Sequence record: OP380604.1
Strand: one strand, 5' to 3'
Length of the DNA stretch: 64,000 bases
Position 1 is the first letter of the stretch, and each line of letters begins with the position of its first letter. The position numbers and the translations under genes are program-made. The notes below the pieces were generated by a model that was given only the letters and a program-made list of their open reading frames with translations, did no database searches and was not told the origin of the DNA. Shown piece by piece: positions 5,467 through 57,278 of the stretch.

Positions 5467-6072
5467 ATGAACAGAATCGGTATGAAAATTGCTCATTTCA
5501 CTATCACACGTATAATTTGTGTTGACAACGCTAGGAACAAAGTGTATGCTTGTGTTTGTGAAGAGTGCTCAAAGAAAACATGGCTAGGTAATCCTGTGTT
5601 CCCTGGTACTTTTCAACAGATTGAACGACTCATGTGTTGGTGCAATCGACGCTACCCGTTCAACGCTCAACAAAAAGAAACATTGGTGCGTCGCAACTTG
5701 TCAAGCACAAAGTTTAAACTTCATATGCCGCCTTCTCCAAAAGAAGAGTGGCACAGGGAAAGCCAAATTGCTTTGACTTGCGAGCACGGTCACACCTTCT
5801 ATGAGAAGGTAGGTAAGGTCATGTTCGACGCACCAATTTGCACTGTATGCGCTGGTATACAAAATAAAAAGCCAAAGCATCTTGCTGTTCAGATCACCAG
5901 TGAGTATGCAAAGAAACACGGCTACGCTATTCGTCAAGTCTCCGGTTGGGCCGGCAACAGCACACAATATCAGGTAACTTGCAAGCAACACGGTAGTTTT
6001 GATCTCTCGTTGCGTCGAATAAAATCCGACGCGATTTGCGAAATGTGTTCCACATACAAAAAGAGCCCATAA
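5467..6072 (+). CDS. zinc-ribbon repeat protein (homing-endonuclease-type DNA-binding modules, no evident nuclease)
   Basis: CEHGHTF..CTVC, CKQHGSF..CEMC, CEEC motifs; opposite strand to the flanking late genes. Confidence 0.65.
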   Translation: MNRIGMKIAHFTITRIICVDNARNKVYACVCEECSKKTWLGNPVFPGTFQQIERLMCWCNRRYPFNAQQKETLVRRNLSSTKFKLHMPPSPKEEWHRESQIALTCEHGHTFYEKVGKVMFDAPICTVCAGIQNKKPKHLAVQITSEYAKKHGYAIRQVSGWAGNSTQYQVTCKQHGSFDLSLRRIKSDAICEMCSTYKKSP

Positions 6073-39261: not shown

Positions 39262-39363
39262 CGGGGATTAGTTCAGTGGGATAGAACAACTGCCTTCTCC
39301 TGTGCTTTCCAACGAGAGTACAGAAGAAGCAGTGGGTCACTGGTTCGAATCCAGTATCCTCGG
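39262..39363 (+). tRNA. tRNA-Arg-like gene with 28-nt hairpin insert in the anticodon loop
   Basis: CGGGGAT/ATCCTCG acceptor, D arm with A20, ACTGC/GCAGT stem, T arm; loop CTTCT[28 nt]AA. Confidence 0.8.
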
Positions 39364-39454
39364 CAATGTGTTTTACACAAAAGAAAAAGTCGCGTCGGAA
39401 CTGACACTCATAAAGTCCAATGTACACAAGAGAGTTCCGGGCGCGCATTATTTT

Positions 39455-42432: not shown

Positions 42433-42651
42433 GCAATATGCTCGTATGGACGGGACCAGCGCCCACCTAGCTGGTTGACAGTAGACACTAAATATGTTTA
42501 GTGGCAGTGGAACCCCATATTGTGCTAACACTGCGATGCGGACTGTCTTTATCACGGTATGCCGTAAATCTAAAGTGGAAGTGAACCCTTAGTCAGTCTT
42601 CGGACCAAACCGGCAGTAGCATGAAGCAATGTTGGGATACCGTGATAAAGA
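42433..42651 (+). ncRNA. two adjacent structured RNA candidates
   Basis: multibranch fold 42433-42523; 15-bp perfect helix 42546-42560/42637-42651 enclosing a GTC-TTCG-GAC hairpin. Confidence 0.45.
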
Positions 42652-42654
42652 TTG

Positions 42655-42863
42655 TTTACACTCTATAAACCGTATGCTATCATTATCACATGCTCTTAAA
42701 GTAGAGCATAAATAAAAGATAGTTTACAGCGTTGATAAAACGTGATACAATCTTTATAAGGCTCCGTTCAGCAATCAAAACTTTTCTGCGGATGAAAACA
42801 AAAAGTGAGCCTGTCAAAAATTTAAGAAGCTTTGTTTACAGTCACTAAATAGTAGTGTATAGT
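42655..42863 (+). promoter_or_regulatory. three tandem early/sigma70-type promoters driving the tRNA array
   Basis: TTTACA-17-TATCAT (42655), TTTACA-17-TACAAT (42723), TTTACA-17-TATAGT (42835); each has TG just upstream of the -10. Confidence 0.85.
42759..42813 (+). ncRNA. helix-CAGCAA RNA 1
   Basis: AGGCTC/GAGCCT helix with TTCAGCAA on the 5' side; starts at the predicted TSS. Confidence 0.55.
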
Positions 42864-42874
42864 AAACAAAGATA

Positions 42875-42938
42875 GGAATGAGTTCAGCAACACTTAAAAA
42901 AGCAAATTATTGGAAATATGCCTTAAAAGTTCATTCCG
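42875..42938 (+). ncRNA. helix-CAGCAA RNA 2
   Basis: GGAATGAGTT/AGTTCATTCC helix then CAGCAA; follows the third promoter. Confidence 0.55.
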
Positions 42939-42963
42939 TTTCTTATTTGAAAGTCGTTATTGC

Positions 42964-43045
42964 GGAGGTGTGGCTCAAAGGTTGAGCGGCAGACTGTTAA
43001 TCTGCGGGTAATAACCCTATGTTGGTTCGAGTCCAACCTCCTCCG
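42964..43045 (+). tRNA. tRNA-Asn(GTT) with long variable arm
   Basis: GCAGA-CTGTTAA-TCTGC, G73, GGGT-AATA-ACCC extra arm. Confidence 0.88.
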
Positions 43046-43070
43046 CAATGATGATTTAAAGATTTGTCAA

Positions 43071-43180
43071 TTGGAACATTGCAGCAAACAACACTTATTT
43101 TTCCTTTCACGAAAAACGATGAGGTTCGATTCCTCAGCTCGCGACAAACGAGTCCTCGGACGGTAGAAACAGTGTTCCAG
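43071..43180 (+). ncRNA. circularly permuted tRNA-like RNA (YrlA/Y-RNA architecture)
   Basis: 11-bp closing helix, CAGCAA, anticodon-like arm (TTC), T arm, capped acceptor, D arm, in that order. Confidence 0.7.
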
Positions 43181-43184
43181 ATAT

Positions 43185-43259
43185 AGCCGTGTAGCTCATT
43201 GGTAGAGCACTCCCCTGATAAGGGAGGGGTAGACAGTTCAACTCTGTCCACGGCTACCA
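43185..43259 (+). tRNA. tRNA-Ile(GAT)
   Basis: CTCCC-CTGATAA-GGGAG, CCA. Confidence 0.94.
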
Positions 43260-43387
43260 AATTCAACAACAATGAGAGAATAAAATGAATCTAATAATCC
43301 CGGTATTGTTCTTGTGTGATAACGATCATCAAGACTGTCACCCAGATGGATGTTTTTATTGTTCGCATTATTATTTGTAGTTTAAAC

Positions 43388-43462
43388 GGTGTATTAGTAT
43401 AATGGCTATTATTCGTGACTGTCTATCACAAGATACGGGTTCGATTCCCGTATACACCGCCA
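43388..43462 (+). tRNA. tRNA-Asp(GTC)
   Basis: loop CTGTCTA, G73, CCA. Confidence 0.92.
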
Positions 43463-43748: not shown

Positions 43749-43824
43749 GGGGGTTTAGCTCAGTTGGGAGAGCAACTGGTTTGCAACCAGTAGGTCAAGG
43801 GTTCGAATCCCTTAACTTCCACCA
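43749..43824 (+). tRNA. tRNA-Ala(TGC)
   Basis: ACTGG-TTTGCAA-CCAGT, G3:U70, CCA. Confidence 0.95.
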
Positions 43825-43831
43825 AATTTAA

Positions 43832-43906
43832 GCGGGATTAGCTCAGAGGTAGAGCGTCAGCCTTCCAAGCTGTTCGTCGCCGATTCGAATTCGGTATCCC
43901 GCTCCA
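43832..43906 (+). tRNA. tRNA-Gly(TCC)
   Basis: loop CTTCCAA, U73, CCA. Confidence 0.93.
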
Positions 43907-44123: not shown

Positions 44124-44549
44124 ATGAGCTTACCTAGTTATGCGCTGTTCATGAAGAACGGCGATTGTGTTGGGTCATGCTTTATCAACTGCGGTTGGTG
44201 GCATGATGAACCTCGCACACTGAAACAAATAATTCGTTATACCGAAACCGATGAATGTCCTATTGACTATGATAGCGTAATCGCGTATGGTGTTACGTAT
44301 AGCAATGACTTAGAATTCGAGCTTCTGAAAGCAGAAGAAACGGAAGCTAAGTTAAAAGAGATCGCTGAAAATAAGCGTAAGCAAAGTTGGGAAGATTTAC
44401 ATCAGAAGATGATCGAACGGATGAAACCGATTGATCGAATGCTTCCTGAATTGATTGCTGCTGAAATATACGGAGTTCAGCCAATGAATGAACATGTTCC
44501 TAACGTTTTTTCGTTGAAGGTAGTTTACGGCGATGATATTTCTTGCTAA
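44124..44549 (+). CDS. hypothetical protein
   Basis: ORF within the tRNA array; C-terminal EIYGVQPM segment resembles major-capsid-derived peptides seen in small T4-like ORFs. Confidence 0.7.
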   Translation: MSLPSYALFMKNGDCVGSCFINCGWWHDEPRTLKQIIRYTETDECPIDYDSVIAYGVTYSNDLEFELLKAEETEAKLKEIAENKRKQSWEDLHQKMIERMKPIDRMLPELIAAEIYGVQPMNEHVPNVFSLKVVYGDDISC

Positions 44550-47025: not shown

Positions 47026-47101
47026 AGGGGATTCGCCTAGTTGGCCCAAGGCACCGGGTTTGATCCCGGTATCACAAGTTCGAATCTTGTATCCCCCGCC
47101 A
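47026..47101 (+). tRNA. tRNA-Gln(TTG)-like with a 6-nt anticodon loop
   Basis: CCGGG-TTTGAT-CCCGG; G73, CCA. Confidence 0.75.
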
Positions 47102-47902: not shown

Positions 47903-48631
47903 ATGGAGAACGTTATGGCTACTCATAGAAAACCGGAACAAATAGAAACTACCGATCTTTGTAAATATGGATGCGGAAATATCGCAAAATATAAAAGTGT
48001 TGGTGGGAATCTGATGTGTGAATGTTCGTCAAATAAATGTCCGGTTAATATAAAAAAGAATTCAGAAAAACTAAAAGCACTATATGATTCTGGTATGAGA
48101 AAATCCGGAGCGGAGCTGTATAAATCTCTTAGCCACGACATCAAAACTAGAATGTCGTGGAGTAAAGGATTAACAAAAGAAACCAATTCCGAACTGGAGA
48201 GACCAACTTTGGTTGGTAAACGGTTTGGTGCATCATTGTACGGCCACACAGAAGAATCAAAGCGCAAGATTTCCATAGCCAGAACGGAGTGGCTAAAGAA
48301 GACTGAAAACCGAACGAATCTTGGAAGATTCAAAAAGTCTTGGATGGAAGAAACATTTGAATCGTATCTAAATGAAAATAAAATTACGGGTTGGATAGCA
48401 GAGAAACACTTCTACTCTCCTGTTACAAAGAAAAATTATTATGTTGACTTTCTCTTTCAAGAAAAGATGCTTATATTAGAATTGGATGGAACCCAACATA
48501 GAAAGTCTATAGAACATGATAAACAAAGAGACTTGTGGTTCAATAGTATTGGATACAAAGTTATAAGAGTTCCGGTTGACGAATTCAAACGGAGATTTTT
48601 CTCCGGGGTTGGGTTTATCGATCTACTGTAA
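47903..48631 (+). mobile_element. free-standing homing endonuclease (NUMOD3-like plus DUF559/Vsr-like nuclease)
   Basis: GHTEESKRKISIAR, YYVDF..ILELDGTQH..HDKQRDLWFNSIGYKVIRV; late promoter TCTAAATA at 47879. Confidence 0.8.
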
Positions 48632-53358: not shown

Positions 53359-54795
53359 GTGTCTAATTTTATGAATGCAATGGTACAAGCTCAAGCCCGC
53401 ACTGCTAACGGTGCTGTCACTAACTACACCACTGGCGACAAGTGTCTGAATCTGTTTTCTCAGATTGGTTCCTCTCGCGGGAAAGATCTGACCCAGATGT
53501 TTGTTGATGCTTATACCGAGTCTCCTGACTGGGCTGTTCGCATTCTGCAATGGGCTCGCGATATTCGCGGTGGTGCCGGTGAACGTGAACAATTCATCCG
53601 CCTGCTGAAAGTCCTTGCGCATCGTCACCCTGTTGACGCCACCGTAGTTCTGATGAACACTCCTGAAATCGGTCGCTTCAAAGACGTGGTAGCAATGTTC
53701 AATTCTCCGATTCAGGACGCTGCTGTGGCTATCATGGTTGATGCAATCATGACCAAGCAAAACGGTCTTGCTGCAAAGTGGGCACCTCGGAAGGGCAAAG
53801 AAGCCGGTATTCTGGCCAAAGCTATGCGAATGACTGCTAAAGAATATCGTCACACTATCGTCCGTATGTCGAACACCGTTGAACAAAAGATGTGTGCTCG
53901 TCAGTGGGACGGTATTGAGTTCGGTAAACTGCCGTCTGTTGCATCTGCTCGATATCAGAAAGCATTCCTGAAAAACGCGAACGAGCGTTATGTTGCTTAT
54001 CTTGAGTCTCTGAAAAAGGGTGAGGCTAAGATCAACGCTGCTGCGGTTTATCCGTATGACATGATCAAATCCCTGCGTACCGGTTCTTCTGTTGCTGCTG
54101 ATGCACAATGGAAAGCACAACGCGACTGGATGGCTGGCTCCACTGAAAACGTAATCGCGATGGTTGACGTTTCTGGCTCTATGGGCACTCCGACCGCTGT
54201 TGCTGGCTTGTCTGCTATGGACATCGCGATTTCTCTGGGTCTGTACATCGGCGAACGCTCGCGCGGTGTGTTCAAGAACGAAGTGATTACCTTCGATGAT
54301 AATCCTGAGTTCTACAACATCAAAGCGAAAGGCGACGATCTGCAAAGCATGGTGAATCATCTGGGACGCGCTCCGTGGGGTGGCTCTACCAACTTTGCTG
54401 GTGCATTCAAGATCATTCTTGATCGCGCTGTACGCAATCGAGTTCCGCAAGAAGATATGCCGACTATGATGGTTGTCTTGTCTGACATGGAATTCAACGT
54501 TGCTGATGGTGGCTATAGTGGTTACTATCGTATGCGTGACCGTGAGCCTACCAACTTTGAGGTGATTCGTCAGACTTACCGCGACGCTGGTTACGAAATG
54601 CCGAAACTGGTGTTCTGGAATCTTTGCCCGCGTCCGACTAACAATCCGGTGACCAAAGATGATCAAGGCACTGCTCTTGTTTCTGGTTTTAGTCCCGCAA
54701 TCATGGAGACAATCCTGAGTGCGAAAGAGTTTAACCCGATGCAAATCATGCTCGACAAGATCATGAGCGACCGTTACGTCGGTATCGACTTCTAA
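53359..54795 (+). CDS. DUF2828-type helical plus vWA protein (Ro60/TROVE-like architecture)
   Basis: GTG start after GAGGT; RDIRGGAGERE, AAKWAPR, EQKMCARQW, VDVSGSM MIDAS, TFDDNP, WGGSTNF, SDMEF, LVFWNL. Confidence 0.85.
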   Translation: MSNFMNAMVQAQARTANGAVTNYTTGDKCLNLFSQIGSSRGKDLTQMFVDAYTESPDWAVRILQWARDIRGGAGEREQFIRLLKVLAHRHPVDATVVLMNTPEIGRFKDVVAMFNSPIQDAAVAIMVDAIMTKQNGLAAKWAPRKGKEAGILAKAMRMTAKEYRHTIVRMSNTVEQKMCARQWDGIEFGKLPSVASARYQKAFLKNANERYVAYLESLKKGEAKINAAAVYPYDMIKSLRTGSSVAADAQWKAQRDWMAGSTENVIAMVDVSGSMGTPTAVAGLSAMDIAISLGLYIGERSRGVFKNEVITFDDNPEFYNIKAKGDDLQSMVNHLGRAPWGGSTNFAGAFKIILDRAVRNRVPQEDMPTMMVVLSDMEFNVADGGYSGYYRMRDREPTNFEVIRQTYRDAGYEMPKLVFWNLCPRPTNNPVTKDDQGTALVSGFSPAIMETILSAKEFNPMQIMLDKIMSDRYVGIDF

Positions 54796-56878: not shown

Positions 56879-56888
56879 TGTTTTGTTG

Positions 56889-57005
56889 TCGCGATTAGTT
56901 CAGCGGGAGAGCGCCTCTGATCGCAGAGAAGTATCGGGACCGGTTCGATTCCGTTAAGTGTGGGCACATTGAGAAACGTCACTGGTTCGAATCCAGTATC
57001 GCGAC
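56889..57005 (+). ncRNA. tRNA-like RNA X1 with enlarged anticodon domain
   Basis: acceptor, D and T arms intact; 68 nt between D and T arms; acceptor helix extended to 14 bp; no CCA. Confidence 0.8.
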
Positions 57006-57022
57006 AACAAACAACATTATGC

Positions 57023-57136
57023 TGGCGGTTCGTCTAATTGGTAGGACACTGTAAAATTCATTCTGATAAGAATGTTTTCCGCAATAAATACTCGCCTGTT
57101 AAGCCTGTAATCTGGGTTCGAGGCCCAGACCGCCAG
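57023..57136 (+). ncRNA. tRNA-like RNA X2 with enlarged anticodon domain
   Basis: acceptor, D and T arms intact; 64 nt between D and T; 20-bp flanking helix; CTGTTAA heptamer. Confidence 0.8.
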
Positions 57137-57156
57137 CATAGTGTTGTTAAAAATTT

Positions 57157-57278
57157 GGGGAAGTAGCTCAGTGGTAGAGCAGTAGTCGCAAAAAGCGGAA
57201 TCTGATTAAGATTCTTTACCGCAAACCCTTGCAAAATCAAACTGTTGGTCGTGGGTTCGAATCCCACCTTCTCCGCCA
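57157..57278 (+). ncRNA. tRNA-like RNA X3 with enlarged anticodon domain
   Basis: GGGGAAG/CTTCTCC-GCCA, canonical D and T arms, 54-nt loop in the GTAGT/ACTGT stem. Confidence 0.82.

What the first reader, a model, noticed from the sequence alone, without database searches (positions are those of the whole stretch)
43071..43180. Circularly permuted tRNA mimic with YrlA/Y-RNA architecture inside the tRNA array
Seen: TTGGAACATTG (43071-81) pairs with CAGTGTTCCAG (43170-80). Inside, in order, are unpaired CAGCAA, an anticodon-like arm TTTTC-CTTTCAC-GAAAA (Glu-type loop), a T arm TGAGG-TTCGATT-CCTCA, a loop-capped acceptor-like helix GCTCG-CGACAAA-CGAGT, and a D-like arm TC-GGACGGTA-GA. This is a tRNA opened at the anticodon stem with its acceptor end sealed. 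Established: bacterial YrlA Y RNAs have this T arm / capped acceptor / D arm order closed by a Ro60-binding helix. Inference: a phage Y-like RNA whose likely partner is the DUF2828/vWA protein at 53359-54795; tRNA finders would miss or mis-call it.
Basis: partly seen in the sequence, partly recalled or inferred. Interest (0 to 1): 0.88.

Follow-up and report, generated by a model that had tools for sequence, protein, structure and literature searches.

The report
Phage Y-like RNA with tRNA-like domain
Between two tRNA genes this Aeromonas phage carries a conserved ~110-base RNA shaped like a tRNA cut open at the anticodon and sealed at the acceptor end; it belongs to a widespread, apparently undescribed RNA family encoded next to phage genes for a Ro60-like protein, its probable binding partner.

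Summary
Window 43071-43180 (Aeromonas phage avDM12-TAAL, an Aeh1-like T4 relative) folds into a closing helix, a variable hairpin, a canonical T arm and a capped acceptor-like hairpin. Only the 2-bp "D stem" is unsupported.

The helices covary in seven related phages and in 54 distinct relatives from viral metagenomes. In those relatives the D arm is a textbook tRNA D arm.

The element is the long member of a trio. Two ~60-nt RNAs upstream (42758-42813, 42874-42938), each with its own early-type promoter, share its terminal module: (A/U)AG-stem-UU(A/G)CAGCAA ... A-rich-stem-CUG.

The DUF2828/vWA protein (53359-54795) is predicted to fold like Ro60. In 80 viral loci chosen only for that gene, 59 of 70 RNA hits lie within 700 nt of it, all on its strand. 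The same adjacency occurs in Felix-O1-like, Campylobacter, Listeria and Mycobacterium phages.

The RNA is not a member of Rfam YrlA: there is no hit, the GNCGAA motif is absent, and the protein-binding module is different. I rate it a new variant of a known kind.

Unexpectedly, the short forms match the plan of Dictyostelium Class I RNAs.

Binding, expression and function are all inferred, not shown.

The parts
43071..43180 (+). Long-form RNA (el.3): Y-RNA-like RNA with a permuted tRNA-like domain, between tRNA-Asn and tRNA-Ile
   Evidence: Fold. CM R1 128 bits. CM R3, built from an unrelated metagenomic member, delimits exactly 43071-43180. Conserved in 7 phages.
43072..43081 (+). 5' strand of the closing helix; pairs with 43170-43179
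   Evidence: 9 pairs, 8 with changes on both sides, 94.4% paired. There is a recurrent U.G wobble three pairs from the CAGCAA end.
43082..43087 (+). CAGCAA, the family's signature single-stranded motif next to the closing helix
   Evidence: Invariant in the 7 relatives. Present in all three elements of the window and in nearly all family members.
43098..43116 (+).
   Evidence: Covaries; loop length is 7-9 nt in relatives. It aligns to the inner hairpin of the short forms.
43120..43136 (+). T arm with a canonical T loop (TTCGATT) and a G53-C61-type closing pair
   Evidence: 96-99% paired; the two GC pairs next to the loop are invariant.
43137..43153 (+). Capped acceptor-like (AS) hairpin, 5 bp with a 7-nt loop
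   Evidence: Compensatory changes: GCTCG/CGAGT, ACTCT/AGAGT, CCAG/CTGG. In the family, 7 of 7 pairs change on both sides.
43154..43169 (+). Degenerate D-arm remnant: a G-rich single strand with conserved GG dinucleotides, then an A-rich linker
   Evidence: No conserved stem in the Aeh1 or KVP40 groups. R3 aligns it with low posterior probability. Other members have a canonical D arm at this position.
43170..43179 (+). 3' strand of the closing helix, followed by the conserved terminal G (43180)
42758..42813 (+). Short-form RNA el.1 (AAG-stem-UUCAGCAA-hairpin-A-rich-stem-CUG)
   Evidence: R2 53.2 bits (it is in the training set). R1 E = 0.006. Conserved with compensatory changes.
42723..42751 (+). 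Early-type promoter TTTACA-17-TACAAT; it places the start at about 42758, the first base of el.1
   Evidence: conserved in relatives.
42874..42938 (+). Short-form RNA el.2
   Evidence: R2 29.0 bits, E = 8.6e-5, not in the training set. Its stem covaries: GGAATGA/TCATTCC against AGAGTGA/TCACTCT in PX29.
42835..42863 (+). Early-type promoter TTTACA-17-TATAGT in front of el.2
53359..54795 (+). Gene for the DUF2828 + DUF7788 (vWA) protein with a predicted Ro60 fold; the proposed protein partner
   Evidence: Pfam. AF2 model pLDDT 88.8. Foldseek finds Ro60/TROVE only at E <= 1e-3. Gene-RNA linkage.
42964..43046 (+). tRNA-Asn, the upstream neighbour; el.3 is probably cut out of the same precursor
   Evidence: No promoter was found between it and el.3.
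43185..43259 (+). tRNA-Ile, which begins 5 nt after el.3. RNase P cleavage at its 5' end would leave el.3 with a 4-nt 3' trailer (inference).

Best explanation
The element is the tRNA-like ('YrlA-type') member of a set of three small non-coding RNAs. These RNAs are the cognate ligands of the phage's Ro60-like DUF2828-vWA protein.

All three share a terminal module: 5' (A/U)AG, a 7-10-bp helix, UU(A/G)CAGCAA, and on the 3' side an A-rich stretch, the other helix strand and CUG. I infer that this module is the protein-binding site. It would play the role of the Ro60-binding stem of Y RNAs.

The long form carries in addition a T arm, a sealed acceptor stem and a D-arm remnant, inserted between the inner hairpin and the 3' strand. 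This gives a tRNA elbow with no anticodon and no aminoacylatable end.

By analogy with Ro60-Y RNA particles, this domain would tether a tRNA-recognising host or phage enzyme to the Ro-like ring. Candidates are an exoribonuclease such as PNPase, or tRNA repair or modification enzymes. The particle would then serve RNA surveillance or repair, or counter-defence, during infection.

Shown here: the structure, its conservation, the family, the gene linkage and the protein fold. Inferred: expression as a discrete RNA, processing by the tRNA-maturation enzymes, binding to the protein, and the downstream effector.
For: Structure
- Four helices covary in 22 sequences and five helices in 54 distinct relatives: 95.3% paired against 62.6% in shuffles. 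All 7 acceptor-stem pairs and all 4 D-stem pairs change on both sides.
- Single-sequence folds of unrelated members give the same five-helix plan.

Module
- The same module appears in el.1, el.2 and el.3 and in 25 short forms from unrelated phages. In a plain MAFFT alignment the stem is 92% paired against 65% in shuffles.
- el.3's CAGCAA plus V hairpin aligns to positions 12-48 of the short-form model.

Partner
- The protein is DUF2828 + vWA.
- Its model has pLDDT 88.8 and pTM 0.88. It matches Xenopus and human Ro60 and the Thermus phage phiLo Ro60 over its whole length, with TM 0.5-0.64. All 11 hits at E <= 1e-3 are Ro60/TROVE.

Linkage
- In 80 IMG/VR loci picked only for a DUF2828 gene, there are 70 R2 hits, all on the gene's strand. 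59 lie within 700 nt of the gene, a zone that holds 13.5% of the non-gene DNA (binomial 2.5e-40). 48 of the 80 loci have at least one such hit.
- The elements are adjacent to the gene in Felixounavirus warpig (one short, one long), Campylobacter phage CP81, Listeria phage LP-124 (three in tandem) and Mycobacterium phage DyoEdafos. In DyoEdafos the order is short, long, short, then a terminator, and there are no tRNA genes nearby.
- Long forms sit 16-600 nt from the gene in L162, L202, L196, L151 and L135.

Literature
- Bas63 gp130 is Ro60-like, lies upstream of the tRNA genes and counters the Ppl defence. The authors only guessed that some of those tRNA genes might be Y RNAs (10.1101/2024.10.10.617714).
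- The phiLo Ro60 binds phage Y-like RNAs and host PNPase (PMC12135203).
Against: - There are no expression or binding data for any member.
- In this phage the RNAs lie 10.2 kb upstream of the DUF2828 gene, not next to it.
- Rfam YrlA and Y_RNA do not match the element even at E <= 10.
- The GNCGAA(N)G motif thought to contact Ro60 is absent.
- The D arm is degenerate in this copy.
- Folding energy alone is unremarkable.
- The general long-form model R3 scores a tRNA-Ala/tRNA-Gly junction as high as el.3 (28.7 against 28.4 bits), so that one model does not discriminate.
- Alignments A3 and A9 were fitted to the models, which inflates the pairing percentages somewhat.
- The linkage could partly reflect a shared preference for tRNA arrays.
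Confidence: 0.8

Rival explanations
1. A free-standing tRNA mimic that works without the DUF2828 protein, for instance as a decoy or regulator for tRNA-binding enzymes. Its linkage to the gene would then be a by-product of both lying near tRNA arrays.
For: In this window and in KVP40 the RNAs sit in the tRNA array, not next to the gene. DUF2828 genes often flank tRNA arrays.
Against: Mycobacteriophage DyoEdafos has the three RNAs directly after the gene with no tRNA genes nearby. All 70 hits are on the gene's strand, many within 5-60 nt of it. The short forms have no tRNA-like part at all, yet share the terminal module.
Confidence: 0.08
2. Cis-acting leader or trailer structures that regulate or stabilise the DUF2828 mRNA or the tRNA precursor, rather than trans-acting small RNAs.
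For: Many short forms lie within tens of nucleotides of the gene's ends, on the same strand. No terminator follows el.1-3 in the window.
Against: Here the elements are 10 kb from the gene. el.1 and el.2 each start at the predicted +1 of a promoter of their own. Up to three copies occur in tandem, and they have conserved 5' AAG and 3' CUG ends like discrete RNAs.
Confidence: 0.07
3. A decayed tRNA gene, a relic of a tRNA dimer, or a mere processing spacer in the tRNA array, with no function of its own.
For: The T arm and the anticodon-like loop look tRNA-derived. CM R3 also scores tRNA-tRNA junctions. Chen et al. warn that tRNA dimers give such false positives.
Against: Compensatory changes maintain four helices across phage genera, although overall identity of this region falls to about 70-82%. 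The non-tRNA module (closing helix plus CAGCAA) is the most conserved part and recurs in RNAs that lack any tRNA-like part.
Confidence: 0.04
4. A circularly permuted tRNA gene that matures, by way of a circular intermediate, into a working tRNA, as in some red algae.
For: The order 3' half, linker, 5' half resembles permuted tRNA genes.
Against: The acceptor helix has only 5 bp and its cap varies from 6 to 8 nt. No anticodon loop would form where the ends join. In relatives the candidate loop has 8-9 nt, and the D arm is degenerate.
Confidence: 0.01

Closest known systems
YrlA, bacterial Y RNA (Rfam RF02553; Chen et al. 2014)
   Same: The order of parts is the same: terminal helix, V hairpin, T arm, loop-capped acceptor stem, D arm, terminal helix. 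It is encoded with a smaller sister RNA that lacks the tRNA-like part (YrlB). It is linked to a Ro60-fold protein gene. Rfam YrlA gives partial sub-threshold hits to the T/AS/D core of family members.
   Different: There is no Rfam hit on this element or on the warpig and DyoEdafos members. The 5' motif is UU(A/G)CAGCAA, not GNCGAA(N)G. The ends are conserved as AAG...CUG. The partner is DUF2828, not a Pfam TROVE protein. In the Aeh1 and KVP40 groups the D arm has decayed.
Thermus phage phiLo Ro60 with Yrl1/Yrl2 (PMC12135203)
   Same: A phage-encoded Ro60-fold protein with two or more small RNAs encoded beside it. The phiLo protein is among the best structural matches of the DUF2828 model (9kop, 9l5y).
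   Different: The phiLo RNAs were picked by a CGAA motif and, as quoted, have a stem-bulge-stem shape. No tRNA-like domain or CAGCAA module appears in those passages.
Dictyostelid Class I RNAs (Rfam RF01414; Kjellin et al. 2021)
   Same: This applies to the short forms. Both start with AAG, have a 6-7-bp terminal stem followed at once by (CC)UUACAGCAA, then an inner UUUC..GAAA hairpin, AAACC or an A-rich stretch, the 3' stem strand and CUG(U), about 60 nt in all. The Rfam Class I model lands exactly on phage elements. A profile of the phage RNAs finds 19 of 22 D. discoideum RNAs.
   Different: The Rfam scores are below the cut-off (16.8-26.9 against 41.5). Class I RNAs are eukaryotic, have DUSE promoters, and their known binder is the RRM protein Rnp1A. 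No long tRNA-like form is known among them. I did not check whether Dictyostelium has a DUF2828 protein.
tRNA-like domain of tmRNA
   Same: A T arm plus a degenerate D region without a proper stem, used as a structural mimic rather than for decoding.
   Different: tmRNA has an open, aminoacylatable acceptor end. Here the acceptor is sealed.
Phage T4 stable RNAs rnaC and rnaD (species 1 and 2)
   Same: Small stable RNAs of unknown function inside the tRNA cluster of a T4-type phage. rnaC also has a T arm.
   Different: There is no sequence or architectural match. rnaC has normal tRNA topology and lacks the CAGCAA module. R1 gives only E = 0.75 on it.

Membership tests
YrlA (Rfam RF02553) | Scores at or above the Rfam gathering threshold (69 bits) | tested here: not met
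   No YrlA hit on 42650-43400 even at E <= 10, and none at gathering on the window. The model is present and working: it gives 37-40-bit partial hits on distant family members.
YrlA (Rfam RF02553) | tRNA-like T stem-loop | tested here: met
   TGAGG-TTCGATT-CCTCA at 43120-36. The stem covaries and the loop is invariant apart from one Y.
YrlA (Rfam RF02553) | [quoted passage not shown] | tested here: met
   43137-53. Compensatory changes in the Aeh1 group. In 54 relatives, 7 of 7 pairs change on both sides.
YrlA (Rfam RF02553) | Conserved tRNA-like D stem-loop | tested here: inconclusive
   In this copy and in the Aeh1 and KVP40 groups there is no conserved stem; only the GG dinucleotides are kept. 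In other family members the feature is met: a 4-bp D stem, 98.5% paired, with 4 of 4 pairs changing on both sides.
YrlA (Rfam RF02553) | 5' motif GNCGAA(N0-1)G near the 5' end (proposed Ro60 contact) | tested here: not met
   The sequence read has UUGCAGCAA at that place. The only CGAA lies inside the V hairpin.
YrlA (Rfam RF02553) | Encoded next to a Ro60 (TROVE) gene | tested here: inconclusive
   Here the Ro60-fold gene is 10.2 kb downstream on the same strand, and Pfam calls it DUF2828, not TROVE. At family level the adjacency is strong.
YrlA (Rfam RF02553) | Bound by Ro60; carries tRNA modifications made by TruB and DusA | not testable with these tools
   Needs immunoprecipitation and modification mapping.
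Ro60 / TROVE proteins (for the proposed partner) | HEAT-repeat ring plus C-terminal vWA domain | tested here: met
   AF2 model with pLDDT 88.8. Foldseek against the PDB: the 11 hits at E <= 1e-3 are all Ro60/TROVE, with TM 0.36-0.64 (0.47 or more for ten of them) and alignments of 500-576 columns.
Ro60 / TROVE proteins (for the proposed partner) | Sequence match to Pfam TROVE or to solved Ro60 chains | tested here: not met
   Pfam gives DUF7788, DUF2828 and VWA_2 only. phmmer against PDB sequences finds no Ro60.
Dictyostelid Class I RNA (Rfam RF01414), for short forms el.1 and el.2 | Scores at or above the Rfam gathering threshold (41.5 bits) | tested here: not met
   16.8 bits on 42760-42813, 26.9 on L033, 25.4 and 22.8 on L137 and L188. 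All are full-length matches that coincide with R2 elements.
Dictyostelid Class I RNA (Rfam RF01414), for short forms el.1 and el.2 | AAG start, short terminal stem, adjacent ..UUACAGCAA motif, about 60 nt, CUGU end | tested here: met
   el.1 is AAGGCUC-CGUUCAGCAA...GAGCCUGU, 56 nt. The D. discoideum sequences are.

The most novel reading that the evidence does not exclude
The phage short RNAs linked to DUF2828 genes and the Class I RNAs of dictyostelid social amoebae would be the same kind of RNA. Class I RNAs are abundant, developmentally regulated and of unknown mechanism, and they are reported as unique to Dictyostelia.

On this reading Class I RNAs are Y-like RNAs whose real partner is a DUF2828-type Ro60-like protein. 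By my recollection the Pfam family also occurs in eukaryotes; I did not check this here, nor whether Dictyostelium has such a protein.

The AAG-stem-UUACAGCAA...CUG module would then be an ancient recognition site, or one transferred horizontally, shared by viruses and eukaryotes.
Probability: 0.35. Interest if true: 0.9.

Novelty: new variant of a known kind. Interest (0 to 1): 0.78.

Why it matters
Ro60-Y RNA particles are known in animals and some bacteria, and a few phage examples have been described. Here a second, much larger phage branch comes into view.

- DUF2828-type Ro60-like genes occur in 710 phage records, including Felix-O1-like, T4-like, Listeria, Staphylococcus, Campylobacter and Mycobacterium phages.
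- These genes come with their own RNA family. It has a different recognition module and occurs in short and tRNA-like versions.
- The family is absent from Rfam, and tRNA finders do not call the window's copy.

This gives the Ro60-like anti-defence protein of Bas63 (gp130) concrete candidate RNA partners. It also identifies the unannotated gaps in many phage tRNA arrays. And it provides conserved sequences for testing how a Ro-like ring reads its RNA.

If the link to Class I RNAs holds, it would offer a mechanism for a 20-year-old orphan RNA class.

Tried and rejected
1. Rfam at gathering and at E <= 10 gave no YrlA, Y_RNA or tRNA hit on the element. So it cannot be filed under any Rfam family.

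2. Homology to T4 rnaC or rnaD is rejected. They have a different topology and lack the shared module.

3. Folding energy as evidence is too weak (z = -1.49; z = -0.54 with flanks).

4. MAFFT alignments of the long forms (A1, A4, A7) put the acceptor and D helices out of register. I therefore built models from near-identical seeds and let Infernal align the rest.

5. R1, trained on the Aeh1 group, mis-aligns the D arm of distant members.

6. R3 gives false positives at tRNA-tRNA junctions, both partial hits covering model positions 25-98 and one full-length hit at 43761-43872. Its score on el.3 is therefore not used as evidence on its own.

7. R3's alternative 'D stem' GUCC/GGAC in el.3 would leave a 2-nt loop and has low posterior probability. 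Rejected.

8. The supplement of Chen et al. 2014 listing phage YrlA RNAs is not held, and the 2020 Ro60 review is not held. I could not check whether any DUF2828-linked RNA was already listed there.

9. Literature searches for DUF2828, 'Ro-like' phage RNAs and Dictyostelium with Ro60 found no description of this RNA family.

10. I did not test whether Dictyostelium encodes a DUF2828 protein. No tool here searches eukaryotic proteomes by organism.

Full report
**Source and context.** The window is Aeromonas phage avDM12-TAAL (OP380604.1). It belongs to the Straboviridae and is a T4-type phage of the Aeh1 group; the match is 100%. The finding lies at the head of a tRNA array of at least 23 genes, between tRNA-Asn (42964-43046) and tRNA-Ile (43185-43259).

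**The observation.** The minimum-free-energy fold of 43071-43180 gives:
- a 10-bp closing helix (43072-81 with 43170-79);
- a hairpin at 43098-43116;
- a T arm at 43120-36 with the canonical loop TTCGATT;
- a capped 5-bp hairpin at 43137-53.

Energy alone is not significant (z = -1.49). Neither ARAGORN nor Rfam calls anything here, even at E <= 10.

**Close relatives.** The same spacer in Aeh1, Ah1, PX29/AsFcp_2, phiWae14, phiAS5 and the more distant Ahp1_CNU holds the same element.
- All four helices change in a compensatory way. The closing helix reads GGAACA/TGTTCC, GAAAGA/TCTTTC, GGATCA/TGATCC or GGGAATA/TATTCCC. The capped hairpin reads GCTCG/CGAGT, ACTCT/AGAGT or CCAG/CTGG.
- CAGCAA and the T loop are invariant.
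- The loop of the first hairpin has 7-9 nt, so it is not an anticodon loop.
Only the GG dinucleotides are kept.

**Three elements, not one.** Upstream lie two shorter RNAs, 42758-42813 and 42874-42938. They have the same beginning and end: a closing stem followed by UUCAGCAA, and an A-rich stretch, the other stem strand and C(U)G at the 3' end. They have only one inner hairpin. Both are conserved with compensatory changes in the relatives. Each is preceded by a T4-early-like promoter, TTTACA-17-TACAAT or TATAGT, which puts the start at the first base of the element. No promoter precedes the long element, so it is probably cut from the tRNA precursor (inference).

**A wide family.**
- A covariance model of the Aeh1-group element (R1) found full-length matches in dozens of them. 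These include vibriophage KVP40 and its kin. It also found 55-65-nt matches that lack the inner domain.
- The consensus is 5' (A/U)AGGAUnnnUU(A)CAGCAA, a hairpin, a T arm, a capped acceptor stem, UA plus a plain tRNA D arm (such as GCUCAAUUGGUAGAGC or GUGUAACGGUAGCAC), A-rich, nnnAUCCUG.
- Single-sequence folds of unrelated members give the same five helices.
- A model built from one metagenomic member with all five helices (R3) aligned 54 distinct long forms. 95.3% of cells pair, against 62.6% in shuffles and at most 48% when partners are slid. Paired fractions are: closing helix 98.6%, T arm 98.9%, acceptor 94.6% (7 of 7 pairs with double changes), D stem 98.5% (4 of 4).
- These alignments are fitted to the model, which flatters the numbers. 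A plain MAFFT alignment of 25 short forms still gives 92% against 65% for the terminal stem.
- R3 delimits the window element exactly, but it scores a tRNA-tRNA junction equally. That score is not counted as evidence.
- The short-form model aligns the long element's CAGCAA and first hairpin to its own positions 12-48. The long form is therefore a short form with a T-acceptor-D block inserted before the 3' strand.

**Comparison with YrlA.** Chen et al. 2014 define YrlA by conserved T and D stem-loops, a capped acceptor stem between them, an optional V stem-loop before T, a 5' GNCGAA(N)G motif, and a location next to a Ro60 gene. Its small sister YrlB shares only the motif. The architecture here is the same. 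The 5' motif is not, and Rfam's YrlA model reaches only 37-40 bits on the T/AS/D core of a few distant members against a cut-off of 69. It gives nothing on the window, warpig or DyoEdafos copies. The element works like YrlA on present evidence but is not a member of that Rfam family.

**The partner.**
- ORF 53359-54795 is DUF2828 plus DUF7788/vWA. It has no sequence match to solved Ro60 chains.
- Its AlphaFold model, built from 48 sequences, has pLDDT 88.8 and pTM 0.88. The model matches the phiLo TROVE domain, Xenopus and human Ro60 and the phiLo Ro60 dimer over its whole length. These are the only hits at E <= 1e-3.
- Homologues occur in 710 phage records. Some are annotated 'Ro-like RNA binding protein'.

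**Linkage.**
- Felixounavirus warpig: a short and a long RNA follow the gene within 350-500 nt, in unannotated gaps of the tRNA array.
- Campylobacter phage CP81: a short form ends 20 nt before the gene. It lies under an annotated 'hypothetical protein'.
- Listeria phage LP-124: three tandem elements fill the gap before the gene.
- Mycobacterium phage DyoEdafos: no tRNA genes are nearby. A short element, a long one (T arm, capped stem, D arm UAGCUCAGGGGCAGAGC), a short one and a terminator follow the gene directly.
- In 80 IMG/VR loci chosen only for a DUF2828 gene, the short-form model gave 70 hits, all on the gene's strand. 59 were within 700 nt of the gene, where 13.5% would be expected (binomial 2.5e-40). 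48 of the 80 loci were positive.
- Long forms lie 16-600 nt from the gene in several of these loci.

**Literature.**
- The PhageMaP preprint reports that Bas63 gp130 is Ro60-like, sits upstream of the tRNA genes and counters the Ppl defence. It only speculates that some of those tRNA genes are Y RNAs.
- A 2025 paper shows that the phiLo Ro60 binds two phage Y-like RNAs chosen by a CGAA motif, together with host PNPase.
- A jumbo-phage survey notes TROVE proteins with a tRNA-like partner in a few phages.
- I found no description of the CAGCAA family.

**Mechanism.** The best-supported reading is a Ro-like ribonucleoprotein. The terminal module docks on the DUF2828 ring. The sealed tRNA-like domain of the long form recruits a tRNA-recognising enzyme. 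The short forms may compete or gate access, as proposed for YrlB-type RNAs (my own recollection, not taken from a paper read here). The steps after 'the structure exists and is linked to the gene' are inference.

**Side result.**
- Rfam's Dictyostelium Class I model repeatedly lands, full-length but below its threshold, exactly on phage short forms.
- The published description of Class I RNAs fits the phage short forms point by point: AAG start, 6-bp stem, adjacent 11-nt motif ending ACAGCAA, about 60 nt, CUGU end.
- The D. discoideum sequences also share the inner UUUC..GAAA hairpin and an AAACC stretch.
- A sequence profile built only from phage RNAs hits 19 of 22 distinct Class I RNAs. 12 of them score above the best of 1100 shuffles.
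- I did not test whether Dictyostelium has a DUF2828 protein.

**Verdict.** This is a new variant of a known kind.

Noticed in passing
window 57021-57140 and 57157-57278: Two RNAs with ordinary tRNA topology: open acceptor stem, D arm and T arm. The second ends in GCCA and scores 54 bits with Rfam tRNA despite a ~45-nt insertion. Where the anticodon arm should be, each has a capped hairpin followed by UUU(U/A)CCGCAA. That is the family's stem-plus-motif module in the opposite circular permutation to el.3. They lie 2.2 kb downstream of the DUF2828 gene and are 90% conserved in Aeh1. A short form with the ACCGCAA variant exists at L119 4112-4166.
   Followed up: partly
window 56886-57005: A third odd tRNA-like gene just upstream of those two. 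It has an acceptor stem, a D arm, a short hairpin and two consecutive T arms, and is preceded by a promoter-like TTTACC-17-TAAGAT. ARAGORN does not call it.
   Followed up: no
window 39262-39366: A tRNA-like RNA in which the anticodon arm is replaced by a ~20-bp extended hairpin. Rfam tRNA scores it 53.7 bits and ARAGORN is silent.
   Followed up: no
window 42758-42813; L033 3667-3722; L137 1535-1592; L188 1762-1813: Rfam's Dictyostelium Class I RNA model gives full-length sub-threshold hits exactly on phage short forms. The two RNA classes share start, stem, UUACAGCAA motif, inner hairpin, length and CUG(U) end.
   Followed up: partly
L132 4471-5022 (Listeria phage LP-124): A near-threshold match to ROOL RNA (87.4 bits; cut-off 99.1). 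It lies between the tRNA array and the three CAGCAA RNAs and DUF2828 gene. RtcB and an RNA ligase are encoded a few kb downstream.
   Followed up: no
L133 5861-5998 (Campylobacter phage CP81): The annotated 'hypothetical protein' ORF140 overlaps a short-form RNA (5894-5974) that ends 20 nt before the DUF2828 gene. The ORF call is probably spurious.
   Followed up: no
window 47026-47101: ARAGORN reports a tRNA of undetermined identity with a two-base 'anticodon' (tg). Rfam tRNA scores it 47.6 bits.
   Followed up: no
window 44124-44549 and 47903-48631: Protein genes sit inside the tRNA array. One is a 141-aa ORF with a weak match to the N-terminus of major capsid protein Gp23. The other is a 242-aa ORF with a DUF559 domain.
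   Followed up: no
window 42655-42683: A third promoter-like site (TTTACA-17-TATCAT, with TG) lies about 70 nt upstream of the el.1 promoter, so three promoters stand in tandem ahead of the array.
   Followed up: no
window 43079/43172 and the equivalent column in relatives: A U.G wobble is the commonest pair at one position of the closing helix, three pairs from the CAGCAA end (14 of 22 long forms). A conserved wobble of this kind is a typical protein-recognition feature.
   Followed up: no
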